A stretch of DNA of 64,000 nt from Octopus sinensis (GCF_006345805.1 NC_043014.1:36890001-36954000); one strand, 5' to 3'. Counted from the first letter of the stretch, positions 1,261 to 41,082 are shown. Made by a program: numbers and translations. The notes: generated by a model not told the origin, from the letters alone.

Positions 1261-1504
1261 TATATATATAAACCGACCTTTTCTGTTAAGGTAATCTCAT
1301 CTATAATTCGATTAAATACCAATTCAAGATCGAATTCTAATCATAAAGTTTTGGAATTTTTAAAGTCATTTCGTGTAGCTTAGCTCCTACGTTTAAATAT
1401 CTTGTCTTGATTTCCGACTGGTTTACTATTTTAAATTAATAAAAGGAATTGAAAAGTGTATTTCATTTGCTGTATCATATTTCATTTTTCTTGTTTAATT
1501 TTAG

Positions 1505-1522
1505 CTACCACTGCTAAACCGA
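1505..1522 (+). CDS. Micro-exon A (18 nt, phase 1-1) of unnamed Thr-rich, putatively GPI-anchored protein: (T)TTAKP
   Basis: Acceptor ttttcttgtttaattttAG, exon CTACCACTGCTAAACCGA, donor GTGAGT; in frame with the downstream micro-exons. Confidence 0.7.
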
Positions 1523-1937
1523 GTGAGTAAATTTTTCTCTTATTTTAATTTCATTGTACAGAATTACATTCTTTTGTGTCCACTAGTGGGACAAATTATT
1601 AGTGTCTCGTCAAAAAACTTTTACATCATTTCTGTCCAGTTGAGTTCTGAGCTCCAATTCCGCTAAGGTCGAGTTTCTCATGCTTTCATCTTGCCAGATG
1701 CCAATGAATATAATACTGTCTAGTACCAGGCTCTACTTAAATTAACAGTTGCATTTCTCCAAACAATATAGCTTTATATCTATCCTATGTCATTCTGATG
1801 TAACGCTTTGACTATGGGACGAAATGAAAACACTATTTATCATACACATAATAAATACGCCGTCAGGAAGATAACTAAAACGAAATAATAAAATAGTAAA
1901 TAAAGTAAAACATACATAAGTATGATATATATATATA

Positions 1938-3167
1938 CGAGGGGCGTTCAATAAGTAATGCCCCTGACCCACTTCCCATAGCAGTAGAGCATCGACACTT
2001 GGCACAGTTATTAGCCTTTTCCTACATAGGAACTACCCAGAGTTATGCATTTCTCCCATCGTTTGATACAGCTCTGGAGACCGTTTTTGTAGAAGACGAC
2101 GTGACTTCATAAATCAAGGCTGCATCATCTGGGAAACACTTTCCTTTCAAAATCAACTTCATGGCTGGGAAGAGGTGAAAATCAGAGGGTGCAAGGGGAG
2201 GAGTTCATAGCTGCACGCCTGTGCTTCTGATCTGGCGACACGCGAGGTGTGGACCAGAGCGTTGTCCTGCAGGAGGAGGATGCCTTTGCTGATCTTGCCC
2301 CGCCTCTTGATTTTGATAGCTTCTCTTAATTTCCTCAAAAGTGAAGCATAATAGGCTCCTGTAATTGTGGTACCCTTTGCCAGGAAATCTGTCATCACTA
2401 CTCCGTCCTGGTCCCAGAAGACTGTGAGCATAACCTTGTCAGCGGAGGGCTGCACCCTTGCCTTCTTTGGAGGAGGTGAGTCACGGTGCTTTCACTGCAT
2501 TCACTGGGCTTTGGTCTATGGATCATAGTGATGGACCCAGGTTTTATCCTGTGTGATCAGTCTTTTGAAAAATTTTGACTCATCTTCTTGGCACATCTCC
2601 AAATTCATCCTCGAGCACTCAACGCGTTCTTGCTTCTGGAAAGGTGTGAGCAACCTGGAAATCCATCTGGCAGACACCTTTTGCATATGCAAATGGTCAT
2701 GAATGATAGTTTCCACAGACCCGGTACTAATCTTGACCTTATGGGCTATTTGGCGAATAGTTATGCGTTGACCTTCCAAAATGGCAGCCTCAACTTGACG
2801 GACAGACGTCTCATCAACGGCAGAAGGGGGCGACCAGATCTGGGAGCTGTTTCCACAGAGTTCGGACTATGTTTGAATTCACAATGCCAGCGTTTCACAA
2901 GGTCATATGATGGGGCATCATCACCATAAGTTACTTTCATTTCATCAAAAGTCTCCCGTGGTGTGCGTCCTTTCAAATACAAAAACCAGATCACTGCTCG
3001 ACACTCAACAGGCTCCATTTCACACTTGACTCAGTTCAAACACCTGTAAATCAGAAACCACAATTAGTTCAGAGCTGTAATTCGCCACTTAATCTATAGA
3101 GGTATAAATAAGTGCACATGCACAATTTCAGCTAGATCAAACAACTGCAAGTGTGTCAGGGGCATTA
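1938..3167 (-). mobile_element. Mariner (DD34D) DNA transposon, defective
   Basis: TA + TIR CGAGGGGCGTTCAATAAGTAATGCCCCTGAC at 1938; partial opposite TIR GTCAGGGGCATTA at 3155-3167; transposase remnants inside. Confidence 0.92.
2011..3018 (-). pseudogene. Mariner transposase pseudogene
   Basis: MEPVECRAVIWFLYLKG HTH start, ITQDKTWVHHYDP, KVMLTVFWDQDG, LLQDNA, LAPSDFHLF; frameshifts and loss of HPPYSPD. Confidence 0.92.
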
Positions 3168-3409
3168 TATATATAAACCGACCTTTTCTGAAAAGGTAAT
3201 CTCATCCATAATTCGATTAAATGCCAATTCAAGATCGAATTCTAATCATAAAGTTTTGGAATTTTTTAAATCATTTCGTGTAGCTCAGCTCCTACGTTTA
3301 AATATCTTGTCTTGATTTCCGACTGGTTTACTATTTTAAATTAATAAAAGGAATTGAAAAGTGTATTTCATTTGCTGTATCATATTTCATTTTTCTTGTT
3401 TAATTTTAG

Positions 3410-3430
3410 CTACTACCACTGCTAAACCGA
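3410..3430 (+). CDS. Micro-exon B (21 nt, phase 1-1): TTTTAKP
   Basis: Same acceptor as exon A, exon CTACTACCACTGCTAAACCGA, donor GTAAGT; duplicate of exon A with one extra codon. Confidence 0.72.
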
Positions 3431-3474
3431 GTAAGTAACTTTTTCTCATATCTTAATTTCATCATCTCCAAACC

Positions 3475-3556
<82 letters not shown>

Positions 3557-3739
3557 AAATATTAGGGAATAAAATCCAAATTTACAGGGAAAAATCAGAT
3601 TTAGGATTGAATCCAATTTTATAGTAAAATATAATATAATATTAATTAGAGACAAAACCATTATTATGCAAATCAAACAAAGAAAGACTTAGTTTTAAAC
3701 TATATATATAGTTTAAAACTTGCAAAGAAGGTCTTGAAA

Positions 3740-3785
3740 CCACCTGATGAATGTCCATAGAAGTGACTAGAAACGATCGTAGTGG
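3740..3785 (+). ncRNA. Minimal type I hammerhead ribozyme motif (Penelope-like element type)
   Basis: CCAC-CTGATGA-A-(TGTC..GACTA)-GAA-ACGATCGT-A-GTGG: stem I CCAC/GTGG, intact core, palindromic stem III, GUA cleavage triplet; inside inverted repeats 3640-3690/3833-3885. Confidence 0.7.
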
Positions 3786-4149
3786 ATATCTTAATTATAT
3801 TTAATTTATATAAAATTTTTTATGTATTGGATTAAGTCTTTCTTTGTTTGATTTGCATAATAGTGGTTTTGTCTCTAATTAATATTATATATATATATAT
3901 ATACACACAATGATGAAGATATATCATAATGTTTTCGGGCAATTACAGTCCCTGTCAGTGCATATGTATACAATTATGTGCTTATCTACAGCATTAGATC
4001 TTTTAGCTCTTATTTCTAGCAATGTAGGTTTCTAGCACCCTTAGTCATATTTAGTGACAATTATTAGTTTTCCTTTTTGGTAACTCGTTGCACTCGGCTA
4101 TCTATAGCAATTTTTTATACATAAAAACATATGTCACATAAAAACATCA

Positions 4150-4376
4150 TTTGAGCCTGGCTGTTGACAGTACCGCATGACTGGCCCTGTGTCGGTGGCA
4201 CGTAAAAGCACCCACTACACTCTCGGAGTAGTTGGCGTTAGGAAGGGCATCCAGCTGTAGAAACTCTGCCAGATCAGATTGGAGCCTGGTGCAACCATCT
4301 GGCTCGCCAGTCCTCAGTCAAACCGTCCAACCCATGCCAGCATGGAAAGTGGACGTTAAAAGATGATGATGATGAA
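4150..4376 (+). mobile_element. RTE-tailed SINE/LINE 3' end with (GAT)n tail
   Basis: GTGGCACGTAAAAGCACCCACTACAC...GGACGTTAAAAGATGATGATG; same family at 36740-37175, 55980-56250, 61890-62070. Confidence 0.75.
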
Positions 4377-4619
4377 TGATATGTATATGTGTGTGTGTGT
4401 GCGTGTGTATTTCCCAGTCAATTCGCATTTCAACCACATGCAACACATTGTCAGCAAATTTGTTGGCTTCCTATAACTCAGCGGTTCAGCAAAAGACATC
4501 GAGAGAGTAGGTACCAGACTGAAAACATACGTACTGTGATTACCCTGTTTGACAAAACCTTTCAAGACAATGGTCCAGTATGGCCACAGTCGGATGACTG
4601 TAACAAGTAAAAGATAAAA

Positions 4620-5187
4620 TAAACGATAAACGTCGCCCTTTTCAAGCCTAGCTAGGCTCATGGGTCCGGTTTCCCGGTTACTGTGGCATATGTGTTCCCC
4701 CCCCCAGCTGGACGGGACGCCAGCCCATCGTAGCGTTACTCAAGAAATAAGAGGGAGTGAGAGAAAGTTGTGGCGAAAGGGTACAACAGGGGTCTCTACC
4801 ACACCCTGCCGGAGCCTCATGGAGCTTCTGGGTGTTTTCGTTCAATAAACACACACAACGCCCGGTCTGAGAATCGAAACCGCGATCCTCCAACCGCGAG
4901 TCTGCTGCCCTAACCATTGGGCCATTGCGCCTCCAGAAATGCGCCTTTTTAAAGCCTAGCCAGACTCATGGACCCGGTTTCTCGGTTTCAATGGCGTATG
5001 TGTTCCCCAGCTGGACGGGACGCCAGTCCATCGCAGCGTTACTCATTTTTGCCTGCTGAGTGGACTGGAGCAACGTGAAATGAAGTGTTTTTGCTCAAGA
5101 ACACAAAGCGTCGCATGGTCCTGGAATTGAAACCACAATCTTATGATCATGATGCTGACACCCTAACCACTAAGCCAGGCACCTCCA
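4620..5187 (-). mobile_element. Two adjacent tRNA-derived SINEs
   Basis: Reverse strand heads GGAGGCGCAATGGCCCAATGGTTAGGG (ends 4934) and GGAGGTGCCTGGCTTAGTGGTTAGGG (ends 5187) with A/B boxes. Confidence 0.75.
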
Positions 5188-5964
5188 CAAAAGATAAAAT
5201 ATTAAGTACTAAACCCAAGTAATTGACTACAACCTCTTTCGAAATATGTAGACGTGTGATTATTATTGTTCTTCTTTGTATATCTATAACATACATTGCA
5301 TGTTGCGAATGCTGTCTTCATATTTCACGTCGAAAAAACAGTCTAACTCTATTTTCGCCGCAGCCCGTCTGTCGCGTTGCCATTTGTATACTGCAAACTA
5401 GCGCTTTCTTTAATATCTAGTTTTATGTCACTACTTCTTTGTCATACTCTATCGATTCTACGCTAATGAGTCCCTTTAAAAATCAACCATCACCGCTTGT
5501 TGATAATCACCTCTATCAGCTTCTGCTTAATCAGTCACCAAATGCAGTTGTTGTTGGTGTTCTGGACCAGTTTCCAGTAACTTTACCCCTGATATATTGA
5601 ATCGAGAATGAAAGTTCAAAAGACATTAAATAAACCGCTTTTGTATAAGAGCATTGTAGTTAGTTTGAAGCATTGTAATATCAAAGAAGGTAAAAAGAGA
5701 GAAAATAGCTTCTGACAATGCGGAAAGTTTTATAATACCTTTATATTTCAGGTGCAAAGGCACGTTTTCAGGAGAAGACAATCTGGAGAATGTTCAGTTG
5801 TGCAGATTCCGTTAACCCATTCAAATCCTTTGCATAACTGGACATTTCCCAAGTTGTTTTTCTTCTGAAATATAAAGGTTTATAAAACTTTCCGCATTGT
5901 CAAAAGCTTTCTATTCTCTTTCTTTTTAACCTGCTTTTAATATGTTTTCTATTTTTTATTCAAG

Positions 5965-5997
5965 CTACTACAAAACCACCACTTACTGTAGATTCAC
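5965..5997 (+). CDS. Micro-exon C (33 nt, phase 1-1): TTTKPPLTVDS
   Basis: Acceptor ttttctattttttattcAAG, donor GTAAGT at 5998; open frame continuing the Thr/Lys/Pro pattern. Confidence 0.75.
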
Positions 5998-6932
5998 GTA
6001 AGTTTTTCTATCTTCATTTCATTCAACAGTATTCTAATCTTGCTTTATCAGTCTCATCGATCCTTCTATTCGCATCCCTGTCCCCATCTTGAGTTTTTAA
6101 AATTTGTAAAGGACCCGTTCGTACTTCGGTGTGAAATAATTGTTTTCACAGATCTCTTTCGAGTGTATTCAACGTATTTCGCTTCCAAACCCACCGTAAG
6201 CCACTTTCTTCCGGAAAAGAAAGGGGAGATGGGTTGTGGGGACCTCGGAGTTTCCCACCAACGGAGTTTTGTTTTTCTTTTCCTGATTATTTCGCATGCT
6301 TTCCACGAATATGGCGTCGAAATCACGCGTAAACGGTTCCTTTCCCCAGAAAAGGAAAGATTTGGCAGTTATTTCTTGCACTCCTTGCTACCACGTAACA
6401 GCTATATCCGGTCCTTTATCACAGATAATTGTTACGTGGTAGCAGGGCGTGCTAGAATTAGCAGCGAAATCTTTGGAGGTGAGATACGTTGAATGCACTC
6501 GAAAAAAACCTATGGAAAAAAATTATTTCGCACCGAGCTTACGACCGGGTCTTTTACGAAATATTTACTGTACTTTTAAAGCCATTTTCACTTTAAAATA
6601 TTTTTTAGATATGCCAAAAATAATTTGTGTAATGGTATTGACTTGAAAATAGTTTTTAAAAACATTAAAATATTGTCTGTTTAAAGAAAACTATAAATAC
6701 TTACTGTACAAACTTACATTTTTGAAATTCCATTCACTTAAAAATATTTGTAAATGATTAAAATATTGTGTTTAACAAAAACCAAAATAGAAACTTTTAC
6801 TGTAAAAAAAACTCGTATTTTTTCGTTGGCAAGTCACTAATACTTTTGCCCATCATATCGAAAAGAACAGAAAAATAATTAAAACCTCAAATATTCCTTT
6901 TCTGCATGTTCTTTTTTTGTTGTTTGTTTTAG

Positions 6933-6980
6933 TTCCTAAGATAAAATGGGCGTGGCGTCGTCGATCAAAGTCTAACGCAG
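6933..6980 (+). CDS. Micro-exon D (48 nt, phase 1-1): LPKIKWAWRRRSKSNA
   Basis: Acceptor tttttttgttgtttgttttAG, donor GTAAGT at 6981; open in the phase-1 frame. Confidence 0.72.
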
Positions 6981-7571
6981 GTAAGTGAATTTCTTTCTCC
7001 ATCTCATTTTAATAATTTTCGCTCTTATTAAGTATAGTGCAAGACTCAAACTATTCCGGCAAGCATGGAACCGGGTTTCTGAATTTTCCGGTTCTCTGGA
7101 AACAGCCTAAATATATACTTAAAATATAAAATAAATATGAAAAGATAAAATTATATTTAACAGATTCAAATTAATACACCTGTAGCGGGAATGCTCAGCG
7201 ATTAGCTAGAGTATTTCCCGTGTGATAAAAAAAATTCAAACCAATCATGACTTCACCTAGAACTGGCTCCAGCAACGAATCCATCTTTTCGTGCCTTTCT
7301 CACTGAGCCTACCTAGCACTATAAAGTCAGCATACTTTATCTACTTAACAGAGAGCATTGACAGGTACCATAGGAGGCGGCCAACAGAGATGACGGTCAG
7401 CAGCTGACTCGAGCTAACAACCACAATGAACGATCGCCGACAGCTACACAATGACAAACAACTAAGGTTTTTGACTGCTAGTACAATTACACGAAGAGCA
7501 ATAACATTCACATCCTCTCAACGACAACCTTAGATACACATAAAATTAATATGCTTCTAAAGCAAGGTATG

Positions 7572-7885
7572 TGGAGGCGCAATGGCCCAGTGGTTAGGGC
7601 AGCGGACTCGCGGTCGGAGGATCGCGGTTTCGATTCCCAGATCGGACGTTGTGTGTGTTTATTGAGCAAAAACACCTGAAAAGCTCCACGAAGCTCCGGC
7701 AGGGGTGGGTGGCGACCCCTGTTGTTCTCTTTCGCCCCAACTTTTTCTCACTCTTTCTTCCTGTTTCTTGGGTAATGCTGCAATGGACTGGCGTCCCGTC
7801 CAGCTGAAGGGAACACACACGCCATAGAAACCGGGAAACCAGGCCCATGAGCCCGGCTAGGTTTGAACAGGGCGCATAAATAAAA
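7572..7885 (+). mobile_element. tRNA-derived SINE (GGAGGCGCAATGGCCCAGTGG family)
   Basis: A box TGGCCCAGTGG, B-box-like GGTTTCGATTCC, A-rich tail; partial inverted copy 8012-8137; another copy 57195-57418. Confidence 0.8.
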
Positions 7886-7896
7886 TATTATTTTTA

Positions 7897-7928
<32 letters not shown>

Positions 7929-8205
7929 GTTTATTTGTATTATTTCATTCATTATCGGCATTCTATAGACACCGCCTTAGAGTATTGAAAGAGTAAGCAG
8001 GGTCACCACCATTGCCGGAGCCTCGTGGAGCTTTTAGTGGTTTTCGCTCAATAAACACACCACGCCCGGTCTGGGAATCGAAACCGCGATCCTCGACCGC
8101 AAGTCCGCTGCCCTAACCATTGGGCCTTGCGCCTCCATTTTTTATTATTATTATTATTATTATTATATTATTATTATTATTATTATTATCTTCTATCCAT
8201 AACAG

Positions 8206-8291
8206 ATTACATTGCACGGTGCGAATATTCCAACGCTTCTAGAGTTTTAACAATTGCAACATACCTGGTTTTATCCGAAATTCTTCGTTAA
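8206..8291 (+). CDS. Putative terminal exon: DYIARCEYSNASRVLTIATYLVLSEILR* (GPI-signal-like)
   Basis: Acceptor cttctatccataacAG, phase 1 matches exon D, stop TAA 8289-8291; small residues SNAS followed by a hydrophobic tail. Confidence 0.6.
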
Positions 8292-8477
8292 GCACATGAA
8301 AAGAACCAAATAAGTTAGTAACTTCCTATCTTTAATGTATTGCAAGTTTATTATGCTATTATGTTTTGTATGTATTCGATTGTTCCTTCATGTTCATGAC
8401 CTATGTAAGACAGTAGAATGACCATATCTTTCGAACATGTATTTAAACCTATAGTATCTATCATTCCGTTACTGTTT

Positions 8478-8484
8478 GATGTAT

Positions 8485-8522
<38 letters not shown>

Positions 8523-8965
8523 TGTATATATCTATATATGTATGTATTATGTATGTATGTATGTATGTATGTATGTATATTATATATATATGTATGTATA
8601 TATATATATATATATGTGTATGATATGTATGTATGTATGTATGTATGTATATATTGTATGTATGTATATATGTATGTATGTTGTATATATATGTATGTAT
8701 ATATATGTATTATGTATATATATATATATGTATGTATGTATGTATGTATATATATATGTATGTATGTATATATATATGTATGTATGTATATATATATATG
8801 TATGTATGTATGTATATATATATATATGTATTATGTAGTATGTTATATATGTATGTATATATATGTATGTATGTAGTATATATATGTATGTATTATATAT
8901 GTATGTTATATATATATGTATGTATGTATATATATATATATATGTATTTAGTATATATATGTTTG

Positions 8966-9012
<47 letters not shown>

Positions 9013-9260
9013 ATATATGTATGTATGTATGTATATATATATATGTATGTATATATGTATGTATGTAAGTATGTATGTATGTATGTATATATATGTATGT
9101 ATGTATATATATGTATGTATGTATTATATATATATGTATATATATATATATGTATGTATGTATGTATGTATATATATATGTATGTATGTATGTATGTATA
9201 TATATATATTAATGTATGTATGTATGTATGCATATATATATATGTATGTATGTATGTATG

Positions 9261-9291
<31 letters not shown>

Positions 9292-9805
9292 ATATATATG
9301 TATGTATGTATATATATGTATGTATGTATATACTTTGATACTTTGATAGGTTTCGGCCATTATTGGCCCAGGCCATGTCTAACTTAATAGCACCACCTGG
9401 TGAAGTCTTTCAAGTCAGAATTTGGGCACTATGGCCCACTCAAGTAGAGAGTTATTGTTTACACTATGGCCCACTCAAGTAGAGAGTTATTGTATATACA
9501 TGTATGTATGTATTTATATGTATGTATGTATGTATATATATATATGTATGTATGTATATATATATATGTATGTGTGTATGTGTGTATGTGTGTGTGTGTG
9601 TATGTGTGTGTGTATGTGTGTATGTGTGTGTGTATGTATGTGTGTGTATGTATGTGTGTATGTATGTATGTGTGTATGTATGTGTGTATGTATGTGTGTA
9701 TGTATATATGTATGTATGTATGTGTGTATATATGTATGTATATATGTGTGTATATATGTATATATATATATGTGTGTGTGTGTGTGTATATATATATATT
9801 GTGTG

Positions 9806-9902
<97 letters not shown>

Positions 9903-10000
9903 ATATATATATATGTGTGCGTGTGTGTGTATATATATATATGTATGTATATATATATATATATTTATATATATATTTATATATATTTTTATATATATAT
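8478..10000. repeat. Compound (TA)n/(TATG)n/(TG)n microsatellite blocks
   Basis: About 850 bp and 510 bp of simple repeat separated by a 160-bp spacer containing a 30-bp tandem duplication. Confidence 0.95.
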
Positions 10001-10340
10001 TAGAGGGTTTGGAGATGATGTACAGGTATGTATTTTACATTAGAAGAAATGGGGTACTCAGAAGTTCGGATGGTTTTATATTTACAGATATTTATTTGTA
10101 TATTACATGTTTTTATACATCATATATCACATATCATATATTAGCGCTTTCGTCCATTCTAGTGGAGTTTTCAACTTGAACTAAGTTCTTGGGGGAAATT
10201 TGACCATTTCTATAGTGTTATTGAGTGTGTAGTGGTGGGGACAGATATAAGATAGTACAAGAGGTTGATGAATGGGGAGAAAGTGAGGGAGAGAGCATGT
10301 GTGTGTGTGTGTGCGTGCGTGTGTGTGTGTGTATGTGTTT

Positions 10341-16402: not shown

Positions 16403-16691
16403 CGTTCACAAAATTCATATTAATATTTGCTTTTTTCTTTTCTTTCAACACCAATAACAATACCAGCCGCAGAACAAACGACAACAACTACAGTATCAGA
16501 ACCAATGACAACAACAGCAGCAGCAGCAACAGCAGAACCAACAGTAGCAGTAGCTGCACTAACAGCAGCAACAGCAACAACATTAGCAACAGGACAGCAG
16601 CAACCATTACATACCAATAATGTCAAAAAAATATAAGACTATCAGAGAAAATACCCACTCAAGACCACATATATTAGGAATTACAACAAAT

Positions 16692-17505
16692 GGCAGGATT
16701 CTGGTTTAAGTACCCTATACAACTCCTCATGAGGTTTTTTTTATTATTTTGGGGGATTTTCAGAAAATTGTAGCGAATATGTGTTCTACACACAGGAATT
16801 TATATGATTATCAAAAAAGAAATGCTTTTAATTTTTTAAACCCCTCTCTCAGTCCCACTCCCACCCCATAAATCCTAAAAGTTCCACTCCATTTCGATAT
16901 TTTTTTTAAAAATCAGTATTTAAAATAAGAATAGTCCGAATTTCTTGCTTAAATCCCAGCAATGGACCACTCTTGATTGCATCATCATCCCATTAAATGT
17001 GTTTATGGGAAGAAATACATTGAGGTATCAAGGTGTCAGGTGGTCGTGAGATGTGCTAAAAATGGCAACTATATAGCCCTTAAATGACACACACATTTTT
17101 TTTTGCGGTGGGATTATATAATCGTACGAATTCGCAAAATTTCTTTTTTATTTGCATAATCGCAGGAGTGGCTGTGTGGTAAGTAGCTTGCTTACCAACC
17201 ACATGGTTCTGGGTTCAGTCCCACTACGTGGCACCTTGAGCAAGTGTCTTCTACTATAACCTCGGGCCGACCAAAGCCTTGTGAGTGGATTTGGTAGACG
17301 GAAACGAGGAAGGTGTCAGTTGGTCGTGAGATGTGCTAAAAATGGCAACTAAATCGCCCTTAAACGACACACACATTTTTTTTTGCGGTTGGGTTACATA
17401 ATCGTACGAATTCGCAAAAATTTTCTGAAAATCAAATACAAAAAAATTTTTTTATTTTTTAAGTTATGAAGGGGTTATATGAGGTCCTTAAACCAGAATT
17501 CCGGA
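16692..17505. mobile_element. Non-autonomous DNA element with about 90-bp imperfect inverted ends, SINE head inserted at 17161-17305
   Basis: GGATTCTGGTTTAAG.. vs ..CTTAAACCAGAATTCC; internal 115-bp duplication at 17033 and 17292. Confidence 0.5.
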
Positions 17506-27842: not shown

Positions 27843-27958
27843 TTATAATTTCTTTTTATTATTTTTTGCATAATGTTCAAGTAGATGTTTCTTGTATGCT
27901 TCTTGGTCTGACCAAAGTTCAGCAGCGTAAGAATTCAAAGGACTGTCGTTATTAGGTT
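27843..27958 (-). CDS. UBE2C: Ubiquitin-conjugating enzyme E2 C, exon 5 (terminal)
   Basis: Acceptor ttatttttgcAG; phase 1; EPNNDSPLNSYAAELWSDQEAYKKHLLEHYAKNNKKKL*. Confidence 0.93.
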
Positions 27959-30304
27959 CTGCAAAAATAAAAATAAAAATTTTTTAAAAGAAGAGGAGAG
28001 AGAGAGATAATTGTTTGATAACAGAACTACTTAATGCAGTATTTCTCAACCATATTTTACCTATGGATCCCTTTGATTCTTATTTTACTCAAATGGACCC
28101 TCAAACATTTGATGACTAAAAAAATCCTTTTATGTGTTTAGAATAAAATATTAGGAAATGTATTGAAAAAATATTAAAATCTGTGTATTTTAGAAATATA
28201 ACCAATTTATTTCACATAAATTTTAAAAAATCTTATAAGGGCTCCTGCTAAGAACCAATGATTAAACATATGTATAAAATTCACTGTTATATACCTCCAA
28301 AAATATATAGCCTGAAAAGTACTTTTGTAATCACAGAGAACAGTATTTTTAATTTTAAAAATTTGTACAATTGAGGCTTGAAGTAAAGTAGTAGGGAGTC
28401 GTTTTATAACACTTTTAGTAGCCATACTGGAGCTCTACCTTCCACATAGGGAAGATTATATCAATCCCAATATTTGTGCAGCACAACGGTATTGTAAAAA
28501 AGGCCTAGCCCCTTGTGGGTAGTAAAGAAATAGGTATTTCCTCTGTCGTTATGCTCTATCCATTTGTCCTCTGTGTTTAGCCCCTTTGTGGGTAGTAAAG
28601 AAATAGGTATTTCGTCTGTCGTTACGTTCTATCCATTTGTCTGTCCTTGTTTGTCCTCTCTGTGTTTAGCTCCTTGTGAGTAGTAAAGAAATAGGTATTG
28701 TAAAAAAGGGGGAAATAACTTTTCTTAAGCCAAAGTCTTATTTTTGCCTTATTTCATTTTATAAGGTTAGTCGGATACACGTCACTCGAACTGTAACACT
28801 ATAAACAATACAAGCAGAATGAATATTTTACAGTATCCAGATGTTGGAGCTTCACTATTCTAAGTTTAAATTCCCACTATGGTCCATTCTGCTTTTTGCC
28901 ATAACCTCGTGGCCTATGCCAGGAGTGTAACCAGCCCATTTATGCGAACCTTTCCTTCATTGGACACTAAACTCTGCTTGCGAAGACTGTTGAGGCAAGT
29001 GAAATCGAAATCAAATTCGATGATTGGCATCCGTGCTAGTGGAGCACTAAGAGTACCGTCCAAGCGTGATCGTTGCCAGAGCAACAAATTGGCTTCCATG
29101 CCAGTGGCACGTAAAAAGCACCATTCAAGCGTGATCATTACTTGCATCACTTTATTGGCACTTGTGCTGGAGGCACATGAAAAAACATTCGATTTCAGTC
29201 CCACTAGATGCAACCTTCGGCAAATATCTTCTATTATAGCCTCATGACAACAGCTAAACTGGAAGACAGTGAAGATAGGTGCTTCTGCCATCATACAGAG
29301 GAAGTTTATTAAGGTGGTACTCATGGAATTGGTTCCCTGTCATATCTGACAGTAGACCATGACCAATCATTTACACAGAGACGCTGTGCAAGAGGGGGTG
29401 TAACAAGAAGCAGGGCTTCAAGAAATTCAAATTACCCTAAGACTGGTGACCTGCTCTGAATGTTTGAATTATTAAACTCTACTTAAAACATCAAGAACCA
29501 ATTGGTAGCATTTGGATGGATTAGTTCTAATCACCAGCAGTCAAGATGTCGCTAAAGTAACAGAACCATCTAGATTGAATGAGAAAGGACAGTTGAACAT
29601 TGGTGAAAATGCGTTTCAAAAAAGAAGAAAAATACAAAATTGCAATAAGGAAGAAAGATATTTTTCTCTTTGCATATTGAACGGCTATATGAACTTTGTG
29701 CTGTAATCTTGGAGTTGTAGATTTGGAAGCTTGTGCTAATGTAATATTTCTTAGAAAAGGTTCAGTTTTAAGATGCTGGACCTTTGATTTTTGAATGAAA
29801 AAAAAAGGGTTGGCGACCACGTTATGTTAGACAAGAGACATACGAAAGGACAAACAGCACAGAATTTACTAAAATCTAATTATCCAATTTAAAAAGTAAT
29901 GGCTCAGGGTTGTTGGAACAAACTTGAAATTTTGGAACTCTGATTTAGACTACAGGGGGGAAAACAAAGCAAAACCCAAAAAAGTATAAAAAAAAAAAAA
30001 AGGAAATTGCAGCACCAGAGAAATACCTAAGGATGTGGAAATATGAGAATATCAACTACTACTTCATTCATTTTTAACACCCATATTTTCATCCTGGAAT
30101 GGGTTTGTCATAAATTATTGAATGTTTTTGTTTTTCTTTACAGCTGAAAGCCTTTTCTGTCACTAAATCTTAACCACTTTTCAAGTCAAGTTAATCTTAC
30201 TTCACTGGCCTTTGAAACTGCAAAGCTTAAAAACAACTTGTTGACAAGGAAAATGACAGCAACATCATCACCCATAACAGAGTTATTTTTTCAATAAGCA
30301 CAAA

Positions 30305-30697
30305 GGCGCAGGAGTGGCTGTTTGGTAAGTAGCTTGCTAACCAGCCACATGGTTCCGGGTTCAGTCCCACTGCATGGCATCTTGGGCAAGTGTCTTCTAC
30401 TATAGCCGGGCTGACCAATGCCTTGTGAGTGGATTTGGTAGACGGAAACTGAAAGAAGCCTGTCGTATATATGTATATATATATGTGTGTGGGTGTGTGT
30501 GTGTGTGTTTGTCCCCTAGCATTGCTTGACAACCGATGCTGGTGTGTTTATGTCCCCGTTACTTAGCGGTTCGGCAAAAGAGACCGATAGAATAAGTACT
30601 GGGCTTACAAAGAATAAGTCCGGGGGTCGATTTGCTCGACTAAAGGCGGTGCTCCAGCATGGCCGCAGTCAAATGACAGAAACAAGTAAAAGAGTAA
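30305..30697 (+). mobile_element. tRNA-derived SINE (GGAGTGGCTGTGTGG family)
   Basis: Full-length copy in UBE2C intron 4. Confidence 0.85.
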
Positions 30698-31509
30698 AAT
30701 GCAAACTCATACAAACATCATAATTTCTATGCCCACCGTTTATACTAACAGGGGTTGGCTGTGCAACAAAATTTGACACAAAGGATGACCACTATAACCA
30801 CTTATGAGGACACAGTAGACAACACTTGCCCAAGATGCTGTGCAGTAGGACTGAACCTTAAACCACACAGTCAGGGATCAAACTTCTAAAACCACACAAG
30901 CGTGTCGGCAGTGGATCTCGGTAATTCACAACTCTAGATACTCTTAATCTCTGTAGGTAATGGTACTATATACGTAAGGTGGCAAAACCAGAAGAAATTA
31001 TGAACATCCTCGTTAGGCACGGGAGTGGTTCTGTGTTAAGAAGCTTGCTTCCCGGCCACATAGTTCCAGGTTAAGTCCCACTACATGGCACCTTCAGCAA
31101 GTGCCTCAGGCCAATCACAATCTTATGAGTGGATTTGGTACACAGAAACTGAAAGGAACCTATCGTGTGCGTGTATGTGTGCGCACGTGTTTGTTCCAAC
31201 GACCAACAGACAACCAGTGTTGGTGAGTTTACATCCCCATAACTTGTCAGTTCAGCAAAAGAGACCAATACAATAAGTACCAGGTTTAAGGAAAAAAAAA
31301 AGATAAATACTGGGGGGTCGATTCATTCAACTAAAATTCTCCAAAACGGTACTTCAGAACAGCTGCACTAACAAGTAAAAGATCATATTTATGAGATTGT
31401 ATACTAAATTTGGTTTTTTGCATGAGGTGATGAGTAAAGATGAGATTCAGTTATGACTGTTCACATGTTTAAATAAGACAAGTTGTAGAATTACATGATG
31501 ATAAGTTAC

Positions 31510-31714
31510 CTCCAAGTAAGCTTTGAATTGACAGAAGAATAGTTCGCACATCATATAACGCTGACCATTTCTCCTTCAGTATATCCAAACAGATATTACC
31601 ACGTTCATCAACATTTGGATGGAAACACCCGGTATCAAACTTAACTGATGGTGCCTGATATGGGTAACCGCTTGGAAATTGCAACACTAATTTAAACCGT
31701 AATCCATCATAGAC
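31510..31714 (-). CDS. UBE2C: UBE2C exon 4 (205 nt) with catalytic Cys
   Basis: AG/GT boundaries; [57 protein letters not shown]; Cys codon 31589-31591. Confidence 0.97.
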
Positions 31715-31808
31715 CTGGAAAAAGTTATGAGATATAAAAGAGAAAAATTGTATCAGTATCAGGACAGCAATAAAACATCTCCAACCAGTCAACATTATGA
31801 CAATAGTT

Positions 31809-32188
31809 GGATCTTTTCAGTTTGAACGGCAGTTTTTTACATAATTTCTAGGCAACTAAAAAATTTTAAACTTCGTATACTGGTAGAATGTGTTTATAAA
31901 ACATCTTTTTCTCTTGGCTTTATTGAGAAAATTCTATAGTTTGTAAGATATTTTCTTCAATTTCAACCAATCAGTGACGTATTTGAGGTGAAAACATTGT
32001 GCCGTATGAATATGTCCCTTGTTTAAGAAACAGATTGGGTTTATTTACATTTCTGAAGAAAAAAGATACCCCCCCCCCAACCCTAAAACAGATTGAAATG
32101 CAATAGATCGATACTAGGTTCATAATTATGGGTGACAATTTCATATGACACCGCTAGAAAAAACTTGCCGTTCAAACCGAAAAGATCC
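31809..32188. mobile_element. Merlin-type MITE (same family as 21113)
   Basis: GGATC TIRs; 8-bp TSD CAATAGTT on both sides. Confidence 0.8.
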
Positions 32189-32300
32189 CAATAGTTAATT
32201 AGGAATCAAACCGTACTAAGTTGAGTTTCCTTCTACTTTCTTTTTTCTTTTTTTTAATTCATAAAAATATAATTTAATTTGTGAAAACATTTTCCTTCAA

Positions 32301-32518
32301 CCCTTTAGCATTTAAACCAGCCAAATCCAGACTAAACACTGCCTGTTTTATGTTGAAATTAGCTCAATCTGACCTCTCATACTTACTCTACAACGTCATT
32401 TTAAAAATAAACAATCACATTATTGAAATCTCAAAGCTACAAGATAATGTATGACTAATACAAAATAATGTGACAAAATAAGCGTTACATTTGACAGAGT
32501 AACCTGAATGCTAAAGGG
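32301..32518. mobile_element. piggyBac-type MITE
   Basis: TIR CCCTTTAGCATT / AATGCTAAAGGG; flanks TCAA and TTAA. Confidence 0.75.
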
Positions 32519-33153
32519 TTAAAATTATAATTTGGAGCAAGAATACATTTGTATGTATTTTTATTTGGCAGCTTCCTGCTAAGTAGTACTCATTTCTTAA
32601 AGTACACTTTCTCGGTTATTGTGGGTAGGTTGTTTTGGACAATATCAATTGCTTTTGCCGATAGAAGTCCCAACTGTGAATTAAGAATACAACTTAGTAC
32701 GAGGTCAGCAAGTGCCATGACTGAATTAAGACTACAAGTTAGTGCCAGATTATTTCCAAACACGTAGTCTAATAATGAAAGATTGTTTAACAATGTTTAG
32801 TAATTTCCTAAACTTCCACCCTCCTCAGATCAATATTTTTGAAGAATTCTAAGGTAACATGCTGGCAGAATTGTTAGCATGCCTCACAAGAAGCTTAACA
32901 GAATTCCGTCTGTCTTTACATTCTGATTTCAAATTCCACCAAGGTCAACTTTGCCTGTCATCCTTTCAGAAATAAAATAAGTACCAGTTGGGCACTGGGG
33001 TCATACTCCCTCCCCAAGAATTGCCGTGACAAAATTTGAAATCAATATATTGAAGAAGTCTACATCCGACACTTTTCAGACATGGCCCATTCAACGCTAG
33101 TTACTCCTTTTGTATCAAATTCCCATCCTGTTTCACTCAGTTTTTACCTAGAG

Positions 33154-33347
33154 CAGTGCTTTTCAAACTTTTTGCTGGAGTGGAACCCCAAGAAAACATT
33201 CCACTGGCTCGAGGAGCCCCTAATTTAAAAGTCTTATGCACACATATCTGCACAGGAGAATTAAAAATTACTGCCGATTTTAGCAGTTTTGTAACTTCTT
33301 GAGGAACCCCTAGACTGTACTGGCGGAACCCTTGTTGAAAACCACTG
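33154..33347. mobile_element. hAT (Charlie-like) MITE
   Basis: TIR CAGTG.TTTTCAA; 8-bp TSD ACCTAGAG on both sides. Confidence 0.88.
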
Positions 33348-34826
33348 ACCTAGAGAGATATTCCTCCATATCAACAGCTTACACCATTTGTTTGTATTAA
33401 TTACACTATTTTTGTTTGACCACTTGGTATATATCTAACAAAACCATTTCTTGAATATGAGACGTTTTGGCACTGCCTATTTGGCATAGTTAAATCAACA
33501 CCGACTTATTTGACATCAGCTGTATTAATGTTTCTCTCATTCTCTCCCTCTGTTATATGTGTAAGCCTCTAGCTATGTTTGTAAGTATGTGTATTGTTTC
33601 TCTCCCTCCCCCTATTTGTATATTTTTGCAAGCTCCCATTTATATGTGTGTACATGTTTGCCTGCAGTGGCAAAGCATATAGTTGCCAAGACAAGTTGAC
33701 TATCCAGTCAGCTGTGCCAAATTGTCAGCGTCCAGACAGCTGTACCCATTCATTTCATTCTACTATTTCCTCATGTTAATGGGATTTAGCAGTCCTTGCT
33801 TCCACAAATCCAACATATAACTGGGATAAGCCATTTTGAGTTTTGAATTCCTGATCTTCAACAGAGTTTAAAATAGTTTTTTTATTGACATACAAAAAAG
33901 TGATGGTATACAAAAATGCAATCTAATATACCAGATAGAAAACAATTTTTTTCCTTGTTCAAAATTATTCCCAGTATTGCCCCAGACATGTCTGCCACTA
34001 CTTTACCTAGCCAATCTACAAGAGAGCTGCTGATATGTTATACTGGTGGTGTAGCAGTTACCTCAATAAAAATTCATGGTTGCAATTTGAGTTGAAGTTA
34101 TTCTGCCACTTTCTTAGGGTTGTTCCATAGTTCCAGTATACTGAGATTAATAGGATTATGCTATCCTCACAATTACATTGATAAACCAGAACTGTTGATG
34201 CATTTTGTTCAGTAAATCTAACTTATCACCGGGTGGGAAAAAATACAATGCAGAAATTTATTATTTGAGAGGGAAAAATTTAGCTAAACTGAAGCAAAGT
34301 CCAATAAAAATGTGGCAAGAACTAATTAGTGTCCATATCTGACCTTTTTGTTTCAGTCATTGGACAGCAGCCATGCTGGAGCATGCTTTGAAGGGTTTAG
34401 TCAAACAAATCAACCCCAGTGCTTATTCTAAGTTTGGCCCTTTTCCCAAACTGCCAAGTCACAGCGATGTAAACAAACCAACAATGGTTGTCAGGTGACT
34501 AACTGGCAGGAGGCAAAGACACACAAATATATACAATGGGCCTGCACATAGTTTCTGTCTACCAAATTCATTTACAAGGCATTAGTTGGTCCAGGGCTAT
34601 AGTAAAAGACACTTGCCCAAAGTGCTCACTGCACAGTGGAACTGAACCGAAAGCCATGTGGTTAGAAAGCGAGTTTCTTAACTACACGGTAATACTTGCA
34701 CCTGCATATATATTTCACAGATGACAAGAAATAGGACACTGATACTATACATCTCAGACTTTTCTAGTTTATTCCAGCATGGAAAAACACAGGACAAAAA
34801 TGAATGACACTGAATATTTCAATTAC

Positions 34827-34913
34827 CGTTCCAGGAGCACCTTCTATTGTTCCAATCCATTTGAAGACGTTATCTCCATCAGGAAATGCCGATACTCGAT
34901 TATCACCAGAAGA
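34827..34913 (-). CDS. UBE2C: UBE2C exon 3 (87 nt)
   Basis: ttgcAG / GTAATT; SSGDNRVSAFPDGDNVFKWIGTIEGAPGT. Confidence 0.96.
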
Positions 34914-35049
34914 CTGCAATGATAGAAATTTGAAAGCAATTAAAGGAAGTAAGAGCAAGCTATTGTTAGCTTGAAACAATATTTTGACAATCTAATACAC
35001 ACACACATACACAAACATATACATAATATTAAACAGTTATATATCTTAT

Positions 35050-35280
35050 TTCTTTATTGCCCACAAGGGGCTAAACATAGAGGGGACAAACAAGGACAGA
35101 CAAAGGGATTAAGTTGATCAGATCAACCTCAGTGCGTAACTGGTACTTAATTTATCGACCCCGAAAGGATGAAAGGCAAAGATGACCTCAGAGGAATTTG
35201 AACTCAGAACGTAGAGACAGACGAAATACAGCTAAGCATTTCGCCTGGCATTCTAATATTTCTGCCAGCTCGCCGCCTTC
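35050..35280 (-). mobile_element. CORE-type SINE
   Basis: Reverse-complement family match. Confidence 0.82.
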
Positions 35281-35889
35281 TATATATATCTGTAGGAAAG
35301 AAACTACAAAGTTACCATCTTCACATACAAAGTAGTTATTACAAGTAAAATATTAAGAATTTGAAGTTTGTTTATATAAACTGTTTTTAGCCCTGTCACT
35401 CTCCCCTATGGAATTAAAGCAACCATAACCCTATGTAAATAAGCATAATCACAGAGAGAACAGAAATAAAAGGTTCAATTTAAATGCTACTGATCCTTCA
35501 GGAGCAAGCTAAATGCAGCCTAAGAATGTAGTTAAGTCTCTGGTAACAGCAGTAGATAGAAAGTAACAAACACTGACATATAAATATATACAATAAAGTA
35601 TGTGTTAATTCTGTTTCTAATAATTCAGTTCCTATATATTCTAATATCTTTCACAATATTTTTTCTTTACATTTTGATGCAGGGTGGATGCTAAATGTCC
35701 ATGGTAATTAGAGATCCCTTCCCTGTAGTAGAATTGTTTGAAATCCGTAAAAGTTGGCACCTTTGAAAGAAAATGTAGAGAGGAAGAGATTTTCAGGCAA
35801 AGTGCATGGGATGAGGTTTTGGCTCAAGACACAGTAAGAGAAGAGTGGAGGATGCAATAGGAGTGACTGTTCTTAAATTGTATATAACG

Positions 35890-36268
35890 TAGGAGTGGCT
35901 GTGTGGTAAGTAGCTTGCTAACCAACCACATGGTTGCGGGTTCAGTCCCACTGCGTGGCATCTTGGGCAAGTGTCTTCTGCTATAGCCCCGGGCCGACCA
36001 ATGCCTTGTGAGTGGATTTGGTAGACGGAAACTGAAAGAAGCCTGTCGTATATATGTATATATATGTGTGTGTGTGTGTGTCTCCCTAGCATTGCTTGAC
36101 AACCAATGCTGGTGTGTTTATGTCCCCTTCACTTAGCGGTTCGGCAAAAGAGACCAATAGAATAAGTACTGAGCTTACAAAGAATAAGTCCCGGGGTCGA
36201 TTTGCTCGACTATAGGAGGTGCTCCAGCATGGCCGCAGTCAAATGACTGAAACAAGTAAAAGAAAAGA
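35890..36268 (+). mobile_element. tRNA-derived SINE (GGAGTGGCTGTGTGG family)
   Basis: Full-length copy. Confidence 0.85.
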
Positions 36269-36739
36269 AAGAAAGTACCATTTCAAAAGGAACAGGATAT
36301 ACAGTATCTGACTGCATATCTCAGACTATGTTGTGAACCAACAACTTTACACCTGCAGACTACGGTGGTTTGGTTACGTTGTGGTGACCCATGACAAACT
36401 CATCTGGAAGGCAACAGCACCAGATCCTTCCCTGGGTTGGCATACGCAAAGAAGTGGTCAGCTGAAGACACGGCTCACAAAAGTCAAAGTAGATATGAAG
36501 CTCATTTCTGACCCTGGAGTCTTTGGCATTTGCCGCTGTTACTTGGGAACGGCTTCAACACGCTGCAGAATCAGCCACTAACAGATGTGTTTAAACCGCT
36601 TTGACCCATGATGTGGTGAAACTAAATAGGAGCCAGCTTAACCCCTCCCAGGTGAATGCCATTACAAGACAAGAGGATATACAGTTTGGAGGAGAAAGTA
36701 ACAGACAACTACCATTCTTTGTGCACAGTATGCACTTTT

Positions 36740-37175
36740 TTCCTCGTGGCACGTAAAAGGCACCATCCGAACATGGCCGATGCCAGCGCCGCCTTGACTG
36801 GCTTCCGTGCTGGTGGCACGTTAAAAGCACCAACCAAACGTGGCCGATGCCAGTGCCGCTTTGACTGGCTTCTGTGCCAGTGGCACATTAAAAGCATCAA
36901 CCAAACGTGGCCGATGCCAGCGCCGCTTTGACTGGCTTCCATGCCGGTGGCATGTTAAAAGCACCAACCGATCGTGGCCGCTGCCAGACTCCCCTGGCAC
37001 ATAAAAAGCACCCACTACACTCGCAGTGTGGTTGGCGTTAGGAAGGGCATCCAGCCGTAGAAACACTGTCAGATCAGACTGGAGCCTGGTGCAGCCTCCT
37101 GGCTTCCCAGACCCCGGTCGAACCATCCAACCGGTGCTAGCACGGAAAACAGATGTTAAACGATGATGATGATGA
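36740..37175 (+). mobile_element. RTE-tailed SINE with about four internal 67-bp tandem units
   Basis: TGGCCGATGCCAG.. units at about 36773, 36840, 36907, 36973; (GAT)n tail. Confidence 0.78.
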
Positions 37176-37217
37176 TACTCACTAAGAACTATTCAAACAA
37201 ACAGGAATGCAACTTAC

Positions 37218-37245
37218 CAGAAGTACCATCAGTTCTTGCTGTAGT
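37218..37245 (-). CDS. UBE2C: UBE2C exon 2 (28-nt micro-exon)
   Basis: cacAG A CTA CAG CAA GAA CTG ATG GTA CTT CTG GTAAG = (R)LQQELMVLL; links exon 1 (phase 2) to exon 3 (phase 0). Confidence 0.93.

Positions 37246-41051: not shown

Positions 41052-41082
<31 letters not shown>

What the first reader, a model, noticed from the sequence alone, without database searches (positions are those of the whole stretch)
1505..8291. Hidden micro-exon gene: symmetric phase-1 exons build a mucin-like stalk on a putative GPI-anchored protein
Seen: four exons of 18, 21, 33 and 48 nt, each with a pyrimidine-rich AG acceptor and GTRAGT donor, each a multiple of 3 and phase 1-1. With a terminal exon they read TTTAKPTTTTAKPTTTKPPLTVDSLPKIKWAWRRRSKSNADYIARCEYSNASRVLTIATYLVLSEILR*. 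The ORF track misses all of it. Known: this architecture defines schistosome micro-exon genes, where skipping yields length-variable surface or secreted proteins. Inference: a mollusc surface protein with combinatorially tunable stalk length; the 5' exons lie upstream of the window.
Basis: partly seen in the sequence, partly recalled or inferred. Interest (0 to 1): 0.85.

Follow-up and report, generated by a model that had tools for sequence, protein, structure and literature searches.

The report
Likely unannotated octopus micro-exon gene tail
Four tiny, frame-preserving exons with strong splice signals, probably the real but unannotated 3' end of an octopus gene, encode a threonine/proline-rich linker; the proposed GPI anchor and the schistosome parallel are not supported.

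Summary
Exons of 18, 21, 33 and 48 nt (1505-1522, 3410-3430, 5965-5997, 6933-6980, + strand) each have a T-rich AG acceptor and a GTRAGT donor. Each is a multiple of 3 and open in the same phase 1-1 frame.

A crude splice scan of both strands finds 8 such micro-exon candidates in 128 kb. Four are these. One is a genuine, conserved 28-nt micro-exon of the neighbouring UBE2C gene, which serves as a positive control. Three are SINE-borne. Shuffled sequence gives 0.34 per strand.

Exons 1 and 2 are a recent local duplication. Exon 3 shares their AG|CTACYAC start, so this is a growing exon family.

Only the exon architecture is supported. No transcript or orthologue could be reached, and the protein databases lack even this window's UBE2C. 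The terminal exon is only the nearest usable acceptor, with no canonical poly(A) signal for 2.7 kb. The C-terminal hydrophobic stretch is 11 residues, so it is a weak GPI signal. The schistosome comparison concerns gene layout, not membership.

Best reading: the 3' end of an unannotated octopus gene encoding a mucin-like Thr/Pro linker built by exon duplication. Moderately interesting.

The parts
1505..1522 (+). Micro-exon 1, 18 nt, phase 1-1; encodes (T)TTAKP and ends with the A of the next Thr codon
   Evidence: Acceptor score 5.6 bits, donor GTGAGT 3.6 bits. Sequence read.
1261..1554 (+). Duplicated unit 1: about 245 nt of upstream intron, exon 1 and about 32 nt of downstream intron
   Evidence: 95% identical to 3166-3462. 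No substitution across a 146-column run that covers the proximal upstream intron and the exon.
1935..3165 (-). Decayed Mos1/mariner-type transposon inside intron 1. The transposase is broken into three frames, and the right terminal repeat is cut off at the start of unit 2
   Evidence: Pfam HTH_48 (E=1.9e-8) and Transposase_1 (E=3.4e-21) on minus-strand ORF pieces. Sequence read.
3166..3462 (+). Duplicated unit 2, carrying exon 2
3410..3430 (+). Micro-exon 2, 21 nt, phase 1-1; encodes (T)TTTAKP. Same as exon 1 plus an in-frame CTA/ACT triplet
   Evidence: Acceptor score 5.6 bits, donor GTAAGT 3.0 bits. Alignment.
5965..5997 (+). Micro-exon 3, 33 nt, phase 1-1; encodes (T)TTKPPLTVDS. Shares the AG|CTACYAC start with exons 1 and 2 and is probably an older paralogue
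   Evidence: Acceptor score 4.7 bits, donor GTAAGT 4.3 bits. AGCTACYAC occurs only at these three sites in 128 kb.
6933..6980 (+). Micro-exon 4, 48 nt, phase 1-1; encodes (L)PKIKWAWRRRSKSNA. Has only one open frame, 48% GC and 5 CpG, against 24-29% GC in its flanks
   Evidence: Acceptor score 5.5 bits, donor CAG|GTAAGT 8.6 bits. Composition.
8206..8291 (+). Putative terminal coding exon: (D)YIARCEYSNASRVLTIATYLVLSEILR followed by TAA. Less certain than exons 1-4
   Evidence: Acceptor score 4.1 bits. It is the only acceptor >=2.5 bits between 6981 and 10438. No canonical poly(A) signal before 11017. No real homologue among 1.84 billion representative proteins.

Best explanation
The region holds the 3' end of a real, spliced and probably unannotated protein-coding gene of an Octopus genome, transcribed on the + strand. 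Its 5' exons lie upstream of the window.

What the exons encode:
- Three related micro-exons (18, 21 and 33 nt) each start with CT and sit in phase 1-1.
- The first two end with A, so any join among them recreates an ACT Thr codon.
- Together they encode a short Thr/Pro/Lys-rich segment, TTTAKP-TTTTAKP-TTTKPP. This is the kind of sequence that forms an extended, probably O-glycosylated linker.
- A 48-nt exon adds a basic Trp-containing stretch (KIKWAWRRRSKS).
- A final exon probably adds 28 residues and the stop codon.

How the array arose (shown):
- The Thr-rich array has grown by local exon duplication.
- Exons 1 and 2 are a recent 95%-identical copy pair separated by a mariner insertion.
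- Exon 3 is an older, diverged copy.

Inferred, not shown:
- That the exons are actually spliced together, and in this order.
- That the product is extracellular. Phase 1-1 modules are typical of extracellular proteins.
- That exon skipping varies the linker length.
- GPI anchoring, which is the weakest step.
For: 1. Splice signals:
 - All four internal exons pass a scan that only 8 sites in 128 kb pass. Shuffles give 0.34 per strand.
 - The same scan blindly recovered the genuine 28-nt UBE2C micro-exon at 37245-37218.
 - The three remaining hits are SINE-borne.
 - The other UBE2C sites (the micro-exon's own are 9.5 and 6.6) score 1.3-10.1 bits for acceptors and 0.1-3.5 bits for donors. The candidates score 4.7-5.6 and 3.0-8.6.
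2. Clustering:
 - At the strict threshold, with any GT donor allowed, 4 candidates fall in 5.7 kb of one strand against 0.49 expected.
3. Frame:
 - All lengths are multiples of 3, and one common frame is open. That frame is the only open frame of exon 4.
4. Shared origin:
 - AG|CTACYAC is found only at these three acceptors in the window.
 - The exon 1 and exon 2 units are 95% identical. They show a 146-column substitution-free run over the proximal upstream intron and the exon, while 11 substitutions fall in the remaining ~150 columns. I estimate P of about 0.007.
5. Composition:
 - Exons are 36-50% GC; flanks are 15-42% (the terminal exon is below its upstream flank).
6. Not a dispersed repeat:
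 - Apart from the exon 1/2 pair, none of the exon-bearing segments recurs in the window.
7. Terminal exon:
 - 8206 is the first usable acceptor after exon 4.
8. O-glycosylation:
 - A TTAKPTT-type peptide is a known GalNAc-transferase substrate (PMC8472655). This gives weak support.
Against: - There is no transcript, junction or orthologue evidence of any kind.
- No protein in 5.8 billion shares even three 5-mers with the C-terminal 55 residues.
- The terminal-exon peptide has no real homologue among 1.84 billion representatives. The two hits are repeat-summed artefacts: a single stretch scores 26.6 bits, which is about 10^3 expected by chance at database scale.
- These negatives are weak. The database also lacks this window's own UBE2C (best hit 79% identity), although it holds some Octopus vulgaris proteins.
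- There is no Pfam match.
- There is no AATAAA or ATTAAA for 2.7 kb after the stop codon. A 1.7-kb compound microsatellite starts about 180 nt downstream.
- Scan thresholds were set after the fact.
- Exons 1 and 2 are one event, so only three exons are independent.
- The duplication is too young to show selection on the coding sequence.
Confidence: 0.55

Rival explanations
1. The exons are pseudo-exons, meaning splice-like sequences that are not used. They could be relics of a decayed gene, or a fortuitous cluster multiplied by a local duplication. No product is made.
For: - No homologue, domain or annotated protein was found.
- Two of the four exons are one duplication event.
- The introns are packed with transposons, SINEs and hairpin elements.
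- There is no canonical poly(A) signal near the stop codon.
- Scan thresholds were chosen after the fact.
Against: - Three independent strong acceptor-donor pairs at micro-exon spacing on one strand within 5.5 kb, all multiples of 3 and sharing one open frame, are unlikely by chance. I estimate roughly 10^-4 to 10^-5.
- Outside SINEs, the only other site passing the scan is a true micro-exon.
- Exon 3 keeps the same boundary and phase as exons 1 and 2 despite diverged flanks.
Confidence: 0.22
2. The exons are spliced but non-coding. They would be part of a long non-coding RNA or of an untranslated region of a gene upstream, so the open frame is incidental.
For: - The peptide has no homologues.
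- Its C-terminal half (KIKWAWRRRSKSNADYIARCEY...) does not resemble any known module.
- The terminal exon and its 3' end are poorly defined.
Against: - All four lengths are multiples of 3, and a single shared open frame runs into a stop only in the last exon.
- The repeated unit is codon-structured (ACY ACY ... AAA CCN).
- The exon 1 versus exon 2 difference is an in-frame triplet.
Confidence: 0.13
3. This is the first reader's full model: a GPI-anchored surface protein whose mucin-like stalk length is tuned combinatorially by skipping of the micro-exons, in the manner of schistosome micro-exon genes.
For: - The exons are symmetric and phase 1-1. Exons 1-3 begin with CT and exons 1 and 2 end with A, so any join among them keeps a Thr codon at the junction.
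- The C-terminus has small residues (S-N-A-S) followed by a hydrophobic stretch that ends close to the stop codon.
Against: - The hydrophobic tail is only 11 residues and is followed by E-I-L-R.
- With omega at S49 or N50 the spacer is 1-2 residues. With omega at S38 it is 13 residues.
- The best 19-residue window has mean hydropathy 1.03.
- No signal peptide is visible, there is no splicing data, and there is no relation to MEG families.
- The Thr junction codon is explained by the common origin of the exons and needs no design.
Confidence: 0.1

Closest known systems
NCAM muscle-specific domain (MSD; small exons 12A-12D) in vertebrates
   Same: - It is a run of consecutive very small exons inserted in the extracellular, membrane-proximal part of a surface protein.
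- It encodes an O-glycosylated hinge and is alternatively spliced.
- It is present in a GPI-linked isoform (PMC2120321, PMC2290859).
- This is the closest functional analogy to a stalk made of mini-exons.
   Different: - No Ig or FN3 exons, transmembrane exon or any NCAM-like sequence is visible here.
- The upstream part of the gene is unknown.
- There is no sequence similarity.
- The octopus exons are a recently duplicating family, whereas the MSD exons are four distinct exons.
Schistosome micro-exon genes (MEGs)
   Same: - Very small exons whose lengths are multiples of 3, separated by introns of 0.9-2.5 kb.
- Missed by automatic annotation.
- Skipping would preserve the frame (PMC4350168; bioRxiv 10.1101/2023.06.21.545858).
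   Different: - MEGs are small secreted proteins with 10-20 micro-exons making up most of the coding sequence. They have an N-terminal signal peptide and are reported as restricted to platyhelminths.
- Here only four micro-exons at a gene's 3' end are seen, in a mollusc.
- There is no sequence similarity, and secretion and splicing variation are untested.
Mucin-like PTS linkers and stalks of surface or secreted proteins (my own knowledge: CD44 variable exons, CD45 exons A-C)
   Same: - The composition is Thr/Pro-rich: the first 19 residues are 10 Thr, 4 Pro, 3 Lys and 2 Ala.
- It is carried on symmetric cassette-type exons.
- The likely role is an extended, O-glycosylated spacer.
   Different: - The segment is far shorter, 19 residues against tens to hundreds.
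- The exons are far smaller.
- Glycosylation is not shown.

Membership tests
Schistosome micro-exon genes (MEG) | Most of the coding region lies in very small symmetric exons (multiples of 3; about 6-81 nt) | tested here: inconclusive
   Four of the five visible coding exons are 18-48 nt and multiples of 3. The 5' part of the gene is outside the window, so the fraction of the coding sequence in micro-exons is unknown.
Schistosome micro-exon genes (MEG) | N-terminal signal peptide; small secreted product | not testable with these tools
   The first exons are not in the window. No exon candidate lies in 1-1504.
Schistosome micro-exon genes (MEG) | Protein variants generated by skipping of micro-exons | not testable with these tools
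   No transcript data could be reached. The protein collections lack even this window's UBE2C.
Schistosome micro-exon genes (MEG) | Belongs by sequence to one of the MEG families; platyhelminth lineage | tested here: not met
   There are no homologues at all. The host is an Octopus: a LINE fragment is 95% identical to an O. vulgaris protein.
GPI-anchored proteins | C-terminal signal made of small omega and omega+2 residues, a polar spacer of about 5-10 residues, and an uninterrupted hydrophobic tail of about 12-20 residues running to the C-terminus | tested here: inconclusive
   - The hydrophobic core is 11 residues (VLTIATYLVLS, mean Kyte-Doolittle hydropathy 2.05) followed by EILR.
- The candidate omega sites give spacers of 1-2, 7 or 13 residues.
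- None is canonical.
- No dedicated GPI predictor was available.
GPI-anchored proteins | N-terminal ER signal peptide | not testable with these tools
   The 5' exons are outside the window.
Mucin-like (PTS) domain | Thr/Ser/Pro-dominated repeats | tested here: met
   TTTAKPTTTTAKPTTTKPP has 10 Thr and 4 Pro in 19 residues, from three paralogous exons. It is very short for a mucin domain unless more such exons lie upstream.
Mucin-like (PTS) domain | Dense O-glycosylation of the repeats | not testable with these tools
   The only indirect support is that a TTAKPTT-containing peptide is a mammalian GalNAc-T18 substrate (PMC8472655).
NCAM-type hinge of alternatively spliced mini-exons | Mini-exon cluster lying between the extracellular Ig/FN3 exons and the membrane-attachment exons of an IgSF adhesion gene | not testable with these tools
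   Upstream exons are unseen. No convincing transmembrane or cytoplasmic exon lies downstream on the + strand between 8.3 and 14 kb.

The most novel reading that the evidence does not exclude
An octopus gene built, like schistosome MEGs, largely from tandemly duplicating symmetric micro-exons. The array would continue upstream of the window. Skipping and rapid gain or loss of the exons would generate length-variable Thr-rich surface or secreted proteins. This would be an independent origin of the micro-exon-gene architecture outside flatworms.
Probability: 0.1. Interest if true: 0.65.

Novelty: new member of a known kind. Interest (0 to 1): 0.35.

Why it matters
- If the exons are expressed, this is a gene end that ORF-based and probably automated annotation miss. 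It would be a clean example of a protein linker growing by very recent duplication of an 18-21-nt exon together with its splice signals.
- It would add to the little that is known about micro-exons in cephalopods.
- It would flag a class of Thr-rich mini-exon arrays worth searching for genome-wide with micro-exon-aware aligners.
- On present evidence it does not change any general concept. Small symmetric exons encoding glycosylated hinges are already known from vertebrate adhesion molecules and from schistosome MEGs.

Tried and rejected
1. Word-indexed homology search with the C-terminal 55 residues found no candidates.
   - I checked what that negative is worth using the window's own UBE2C. 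The best hits were 77-79% identical, from other molluscs and from vertebrates.
   - So the species' proteome is largely absent, and the negative says little.
   - A LINE fragment did hit an O. vulgaris protein at 95%, so the collection holds only part of that annotation.
   - Run on the contiguous 30-residue terminal-exon translation, it gave two 'significant' hits (E=1e-17 and 3e-12).
   - I rejected both. They are proteins with 7 and 13 near-identical repeats, and the same weak match is summed over the repeats.
   - A single stretch scores 26.6 bits, 12/25 identities. I estimate about 10^3 chance matches of that strength at database scale.
3. Synteny gave nothing. Lottia UBE2C has unrelated downstream neighbours, CCDC90-like and PRELI.
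4. Exact look-ups of window ORFs, intended to reach longer contigs and the sequence upstream of the window, found nothing on record.
5. Pfam on the peptide gave nothing.
6. I tested whether the exon-bearing segments are a dispersed repeat. They have no other copies in the window.
7. I looked for further TTAKP-type exons or AG|CTACYAC sites elsewhere in the window and found none.
8. I looked for downstream transmembrane or cytoplasmic exons that would make 8206-8291 an alternative GPI-type end. The usable acceptors between 10.4 and 11 kb lie inside a tandem repeat, and nothing was convincing.
9. The Thr/Ala-rich ORF at 16424-16633 is a CAA/CAG-type low-complexity tract, not an exon.


Full report
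**What is there**

- The window is animal DNA, rich in SINEs, hairpin elements, microsatellites and transposon remnants.
- A LINE fragment at 55153-55578 is 95% identical to an Octopus vulgaris protein (CAI9729518.1), so the source is an Octopus.
  - 1505-1522 (18 nt)
  - 3410-3430 (21 nt)
  - 5965-5997 (33 nt)
  - 6933-6980 (48 nt)
  - 8206-8291 (83 coding nt plus TAA)
- Each internal segment follows a T-rich tract ending in AG and is followed by GTGAGT or GTAAGT.
- Joined in phase 1, they translate to the reported 68-residue peptide.
- All four internal lengths are multiples of 3. The phase 1-1 frame is the only frame open in all four, and the only open frame of the 48-nt exon.

**Is it more than chance?**

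- I scored acceptors (16-nt pyrimidine tract, position -3 and position +1) and donors (positions -3 to +6) with a generic metazoan weight matrix against the window's own composition.
- With cut-offs set at the weakest of the four exons, and requiring GTRAGT at 12-60 nt from the acceptor, the 128 kb of both strands hold only 8 candidates. First-order shuffles give 0.34 per strand.
- Four of the 8 are the finding.
- One of the 8, at 37245-37218 on the minus strand, turned out to be a true micro-exon.
  - It encodes the RLQQELMVLL segment of the UBE2C gene.
  - I reconstructed the other UBE2C exons from homology: 41232-41141, 34913-34827, 31714-31510 and 27958-27843.
  - This is an unplanned positive control.
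- The remaining three all contain the same SINE sequence, GGAGTGGCTGTGTG|GTAAGT.
- The other UBE2C splice sites score 1.3-10.1 bits (acceptors) and 0.1-3.5 bits (donors) (the micro-exon's own are 9.5 and 6.6). The finding's sites score 4.7-5.6 and 3.0-8.6.
- At the strict cut-off, with any GT donor allowed, there are 4 candidates in 5.7 kb against 0.49 expected. The excess shrinks as the cut-offs are loosened.
- I add the multiple-of-3 lengths (1/27 for three independent exons) and the shared open frame (about 0.1). My combined estimate for a chance explanation is then roughly 10^-4 to 10^-5.
- That estimate carries the caveat that the thresholds were chosen after the fact.

**Anatomy and history**

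- Exon 1 lies in a ~295-nt unit (1261-1554) that recurs at 3166-3462 with exon 2, at 95% identity.
- The exons differ by one in-frame triplet, and the donors differ as GTGAGT versus GTAAGT.
- Between the two copies sits a decayed Mos1/mariner element (Pfam HTH_48 and Transposase_1 on broken minus-strand frames). Its right terminal repeat is truncated exactly where unit 2 begins.
- The 11 substitutions between the units all fall outside a 146-column run that spans the proximal upstream intron and the exon. My estimate is P of about 0.007. This is compatible with constraint on splicing signals or with gene conversion.
- Exon 3 shares the AG|CTACYAC start with exons 1 and 2. That motif occurs nowhere else in the window.
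- Exon 3 also encodes TTKPP, against TT(T)AKP in exons 1 and 2, but its flanks are unrelated. I read it as an older paralogue.
- The Thr-rich segment is therefore an exon family that grows by local duplication.
- Because exons 1-3 begin with CT, and exons 1 and 2 end with A, every junction among them is an ACT Thr codon. This follows from common descent and need not be a device for skipping.
- The introns are 1.9, 2.5, 0.9 and 1.2 kb, similar to the 2.3-3.9 kb of UBE2C. They are filled with SINEs and hairpin elements.

**The 3' end**

- After the exon 4 donor, the acceptor at 8206 is the only one scoring >=2.5 bits before 10438. The later ones lie in a tandem repeat. So 8206 is the natural next exon, and it gives 28 codons and a stop.
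- There is no AATAAA or ATTAAA until 11017. A 1.7-kb TA/GTAT/GT microsatellite begins about 180 nt after the stop codon.
- The terminal exon is therefore plausible but much less secure than exons 1-4.

**What the product would be**

- The first 19 residues are 10 Thr, 4 Pro, 3 Lys and 2 Ala, a typical extended O-glycosylation-type linker.
- A TTAKPTT-containing peptide is a known GalNAc-transferase substrate (PMC8472655).
- The rest (LTVDSLPKIKWAWRRRSKSNADYIARCEYSNASRVLTIATYLVLSEILR) has no Pfam match and no homologue.
- The two apparent HMMER hits are artefacts. A 26.6-bit, 12/25-identity match is summed over 7 or 13 near-identical repeats of unrelated metagenomic proteins.
- The hydrophobic stretch is 11 residues (mean Kyte-Doolittle hydropathy 2.05). 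The best 19-residue window averages 1.03, so this is not a transmembrane helix.
- As a GPI signal it is short and ends in E-I-L-R. No omega/spacer arrangement is canonical.
- GPI anchoring is possible but unsupported.

**What could not be done**

- No cephalopod transcriptome or second octopus genome could be reached.
- The protein collections do not contain this window's UBE2C (best hit 79% identity). The absence of the peptide is therefore weak evidence.
- Exact look-ups of window ORFs found nothing.
- Synteny with Lottia is uninformative.

**Comparison with known systems**

- Schistosome MEGs share the layout: tiny symmetric exons, long introns and difficulty of annotation.
  - They are defined by most of the coding sequence being micro-exons in small secreted proteins, with demonstrated splice variation.
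  - They are reported as restricted to platyhelminths.
  - None of those further features is shown here, and sequence membership is not met.
- The NCAM muscle-specific domain is a closer working analogy. It is four small alternatively spliced exons encoding an O-glycosylated hinge, also present in a GPI-linked isoform.
  - No IgSF context can be seen here.

**Verdict**

- The best explanation (confidence about 0.55) is a genuine, unannotated 3' end of an octopus gene whose Thr/Pro linker is encoded by recently duplicating phase 1-1 micro-exons.
- Unused pseudo-exons (about 0.22) and spliced but non-coding exons (about 0.13) remain open.
- The GPI and combinatorial-stalk model is the least supported part (about 0.1).
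- This is a new member of a known kind and is moderately interesting.
- It is decidable with existing RNA-seq data that these tools could not reach.

Noticed in passing
window 27843-41232, minus strand: A complete UBE2C-type ubiquitin-conjugating enzyme gene in five exons: 41232-41141, 37245-37218, 34913-34827, 31714-31510 and 27958-27843. The product would be about 175 aa. The 28-nt micro-exon encodes RLQQELMVLL. The gene lies convergent to the finding's gene, and no protein closer than 79% identity is in the collections.
   Followed up: yes
window 1383-1525 vs 3289-3433 (within units 1261-1554 / 3166-3462): Between the two duplicated exon units, all 11 substitutions lie outside a 146-column run covering the proximal upstream intron and the exon. 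My estimate is P of about 0.007. This could reflect constraint on splicing elements or a gene-conversion tract.
   Followed up: partly
window 6425-6478, + strand: A further 54-nt segment inside a hairpin (MITE-like) element in intron 3. It has a usable acceptor (4.0 bits) and a GTGAGA donor (6.5 bits), is a multiple of 3 and is open in the same phase 1-1 frame (it would read HNCYVVAGRARISSEIFG). It is a possible transposon-derived cassette exon or a coincidence.
   Followed up: no
window 5283-5310 vs 8196-8226: A 28-nt block spanning the terminal-exon acceptor (ATAACAGATTACATTGCACGGTGCGAAT) has a near-copy in intron 2. That copy also follows an ATT repeat downstream of a SINE, but it lacks the AG. 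Similarity stops on both sides, so this is either a decayed duplicate or chance.
   Followed up: partly
window 6903-6908: TGCATG, the Rbfox-type motif, lies 30 nt upstream of exon 4. There are only 15 such sites on the + strand of the whole window and 2 in the first 9.5 kb.
   Followed up: no
window 1935-3165, minus strand: A decayed Mos1/mariner transposon lies in intron 1. Its transposase is split over three frames. Its right terminal inverted repeat is truncated exactly at the left edge of duplicated unit 2, so the duplication or rearrangement came after the insertion.
   Followed up: partly
window 8470-10200: A very long compound microsatellite (TA, GTAT and GT/GC-type) starts about 180 nt after the putative stop codon. 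There is no canonical poly(A) signal between 8291 and 11017.
   Followed up: partly
window 53340-55900, + strand: A frameshifted non-LTR retrotransposon with endonuclease and reverse-transcriptase domains. One piece is 95% identical to Octopus vulgaris protein CAI9729518.1, which identifies the host genus.
   Followed up: yes
proteins P0123 and P0124 (ENA metagenome contigs): The HMMER E-values of 1e-17 and 3e-12 for a 30-residue query were produced purely by summing one weak match over 7 and 13 near-identical internal repeats. This is a warning for short queries against repetitive proteins.
   Followed up: yes
window 17166-17178 (+), 38134-38146 (+), 51844-51867 (-): Copies of one SINE family carry a built-in strong donor (GTGTG|GTAAGT) preceded by an acceptor-like tract. 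These were the only false positives of the micro-exon scan and are potential sources of exonisation.
   Followed up: no
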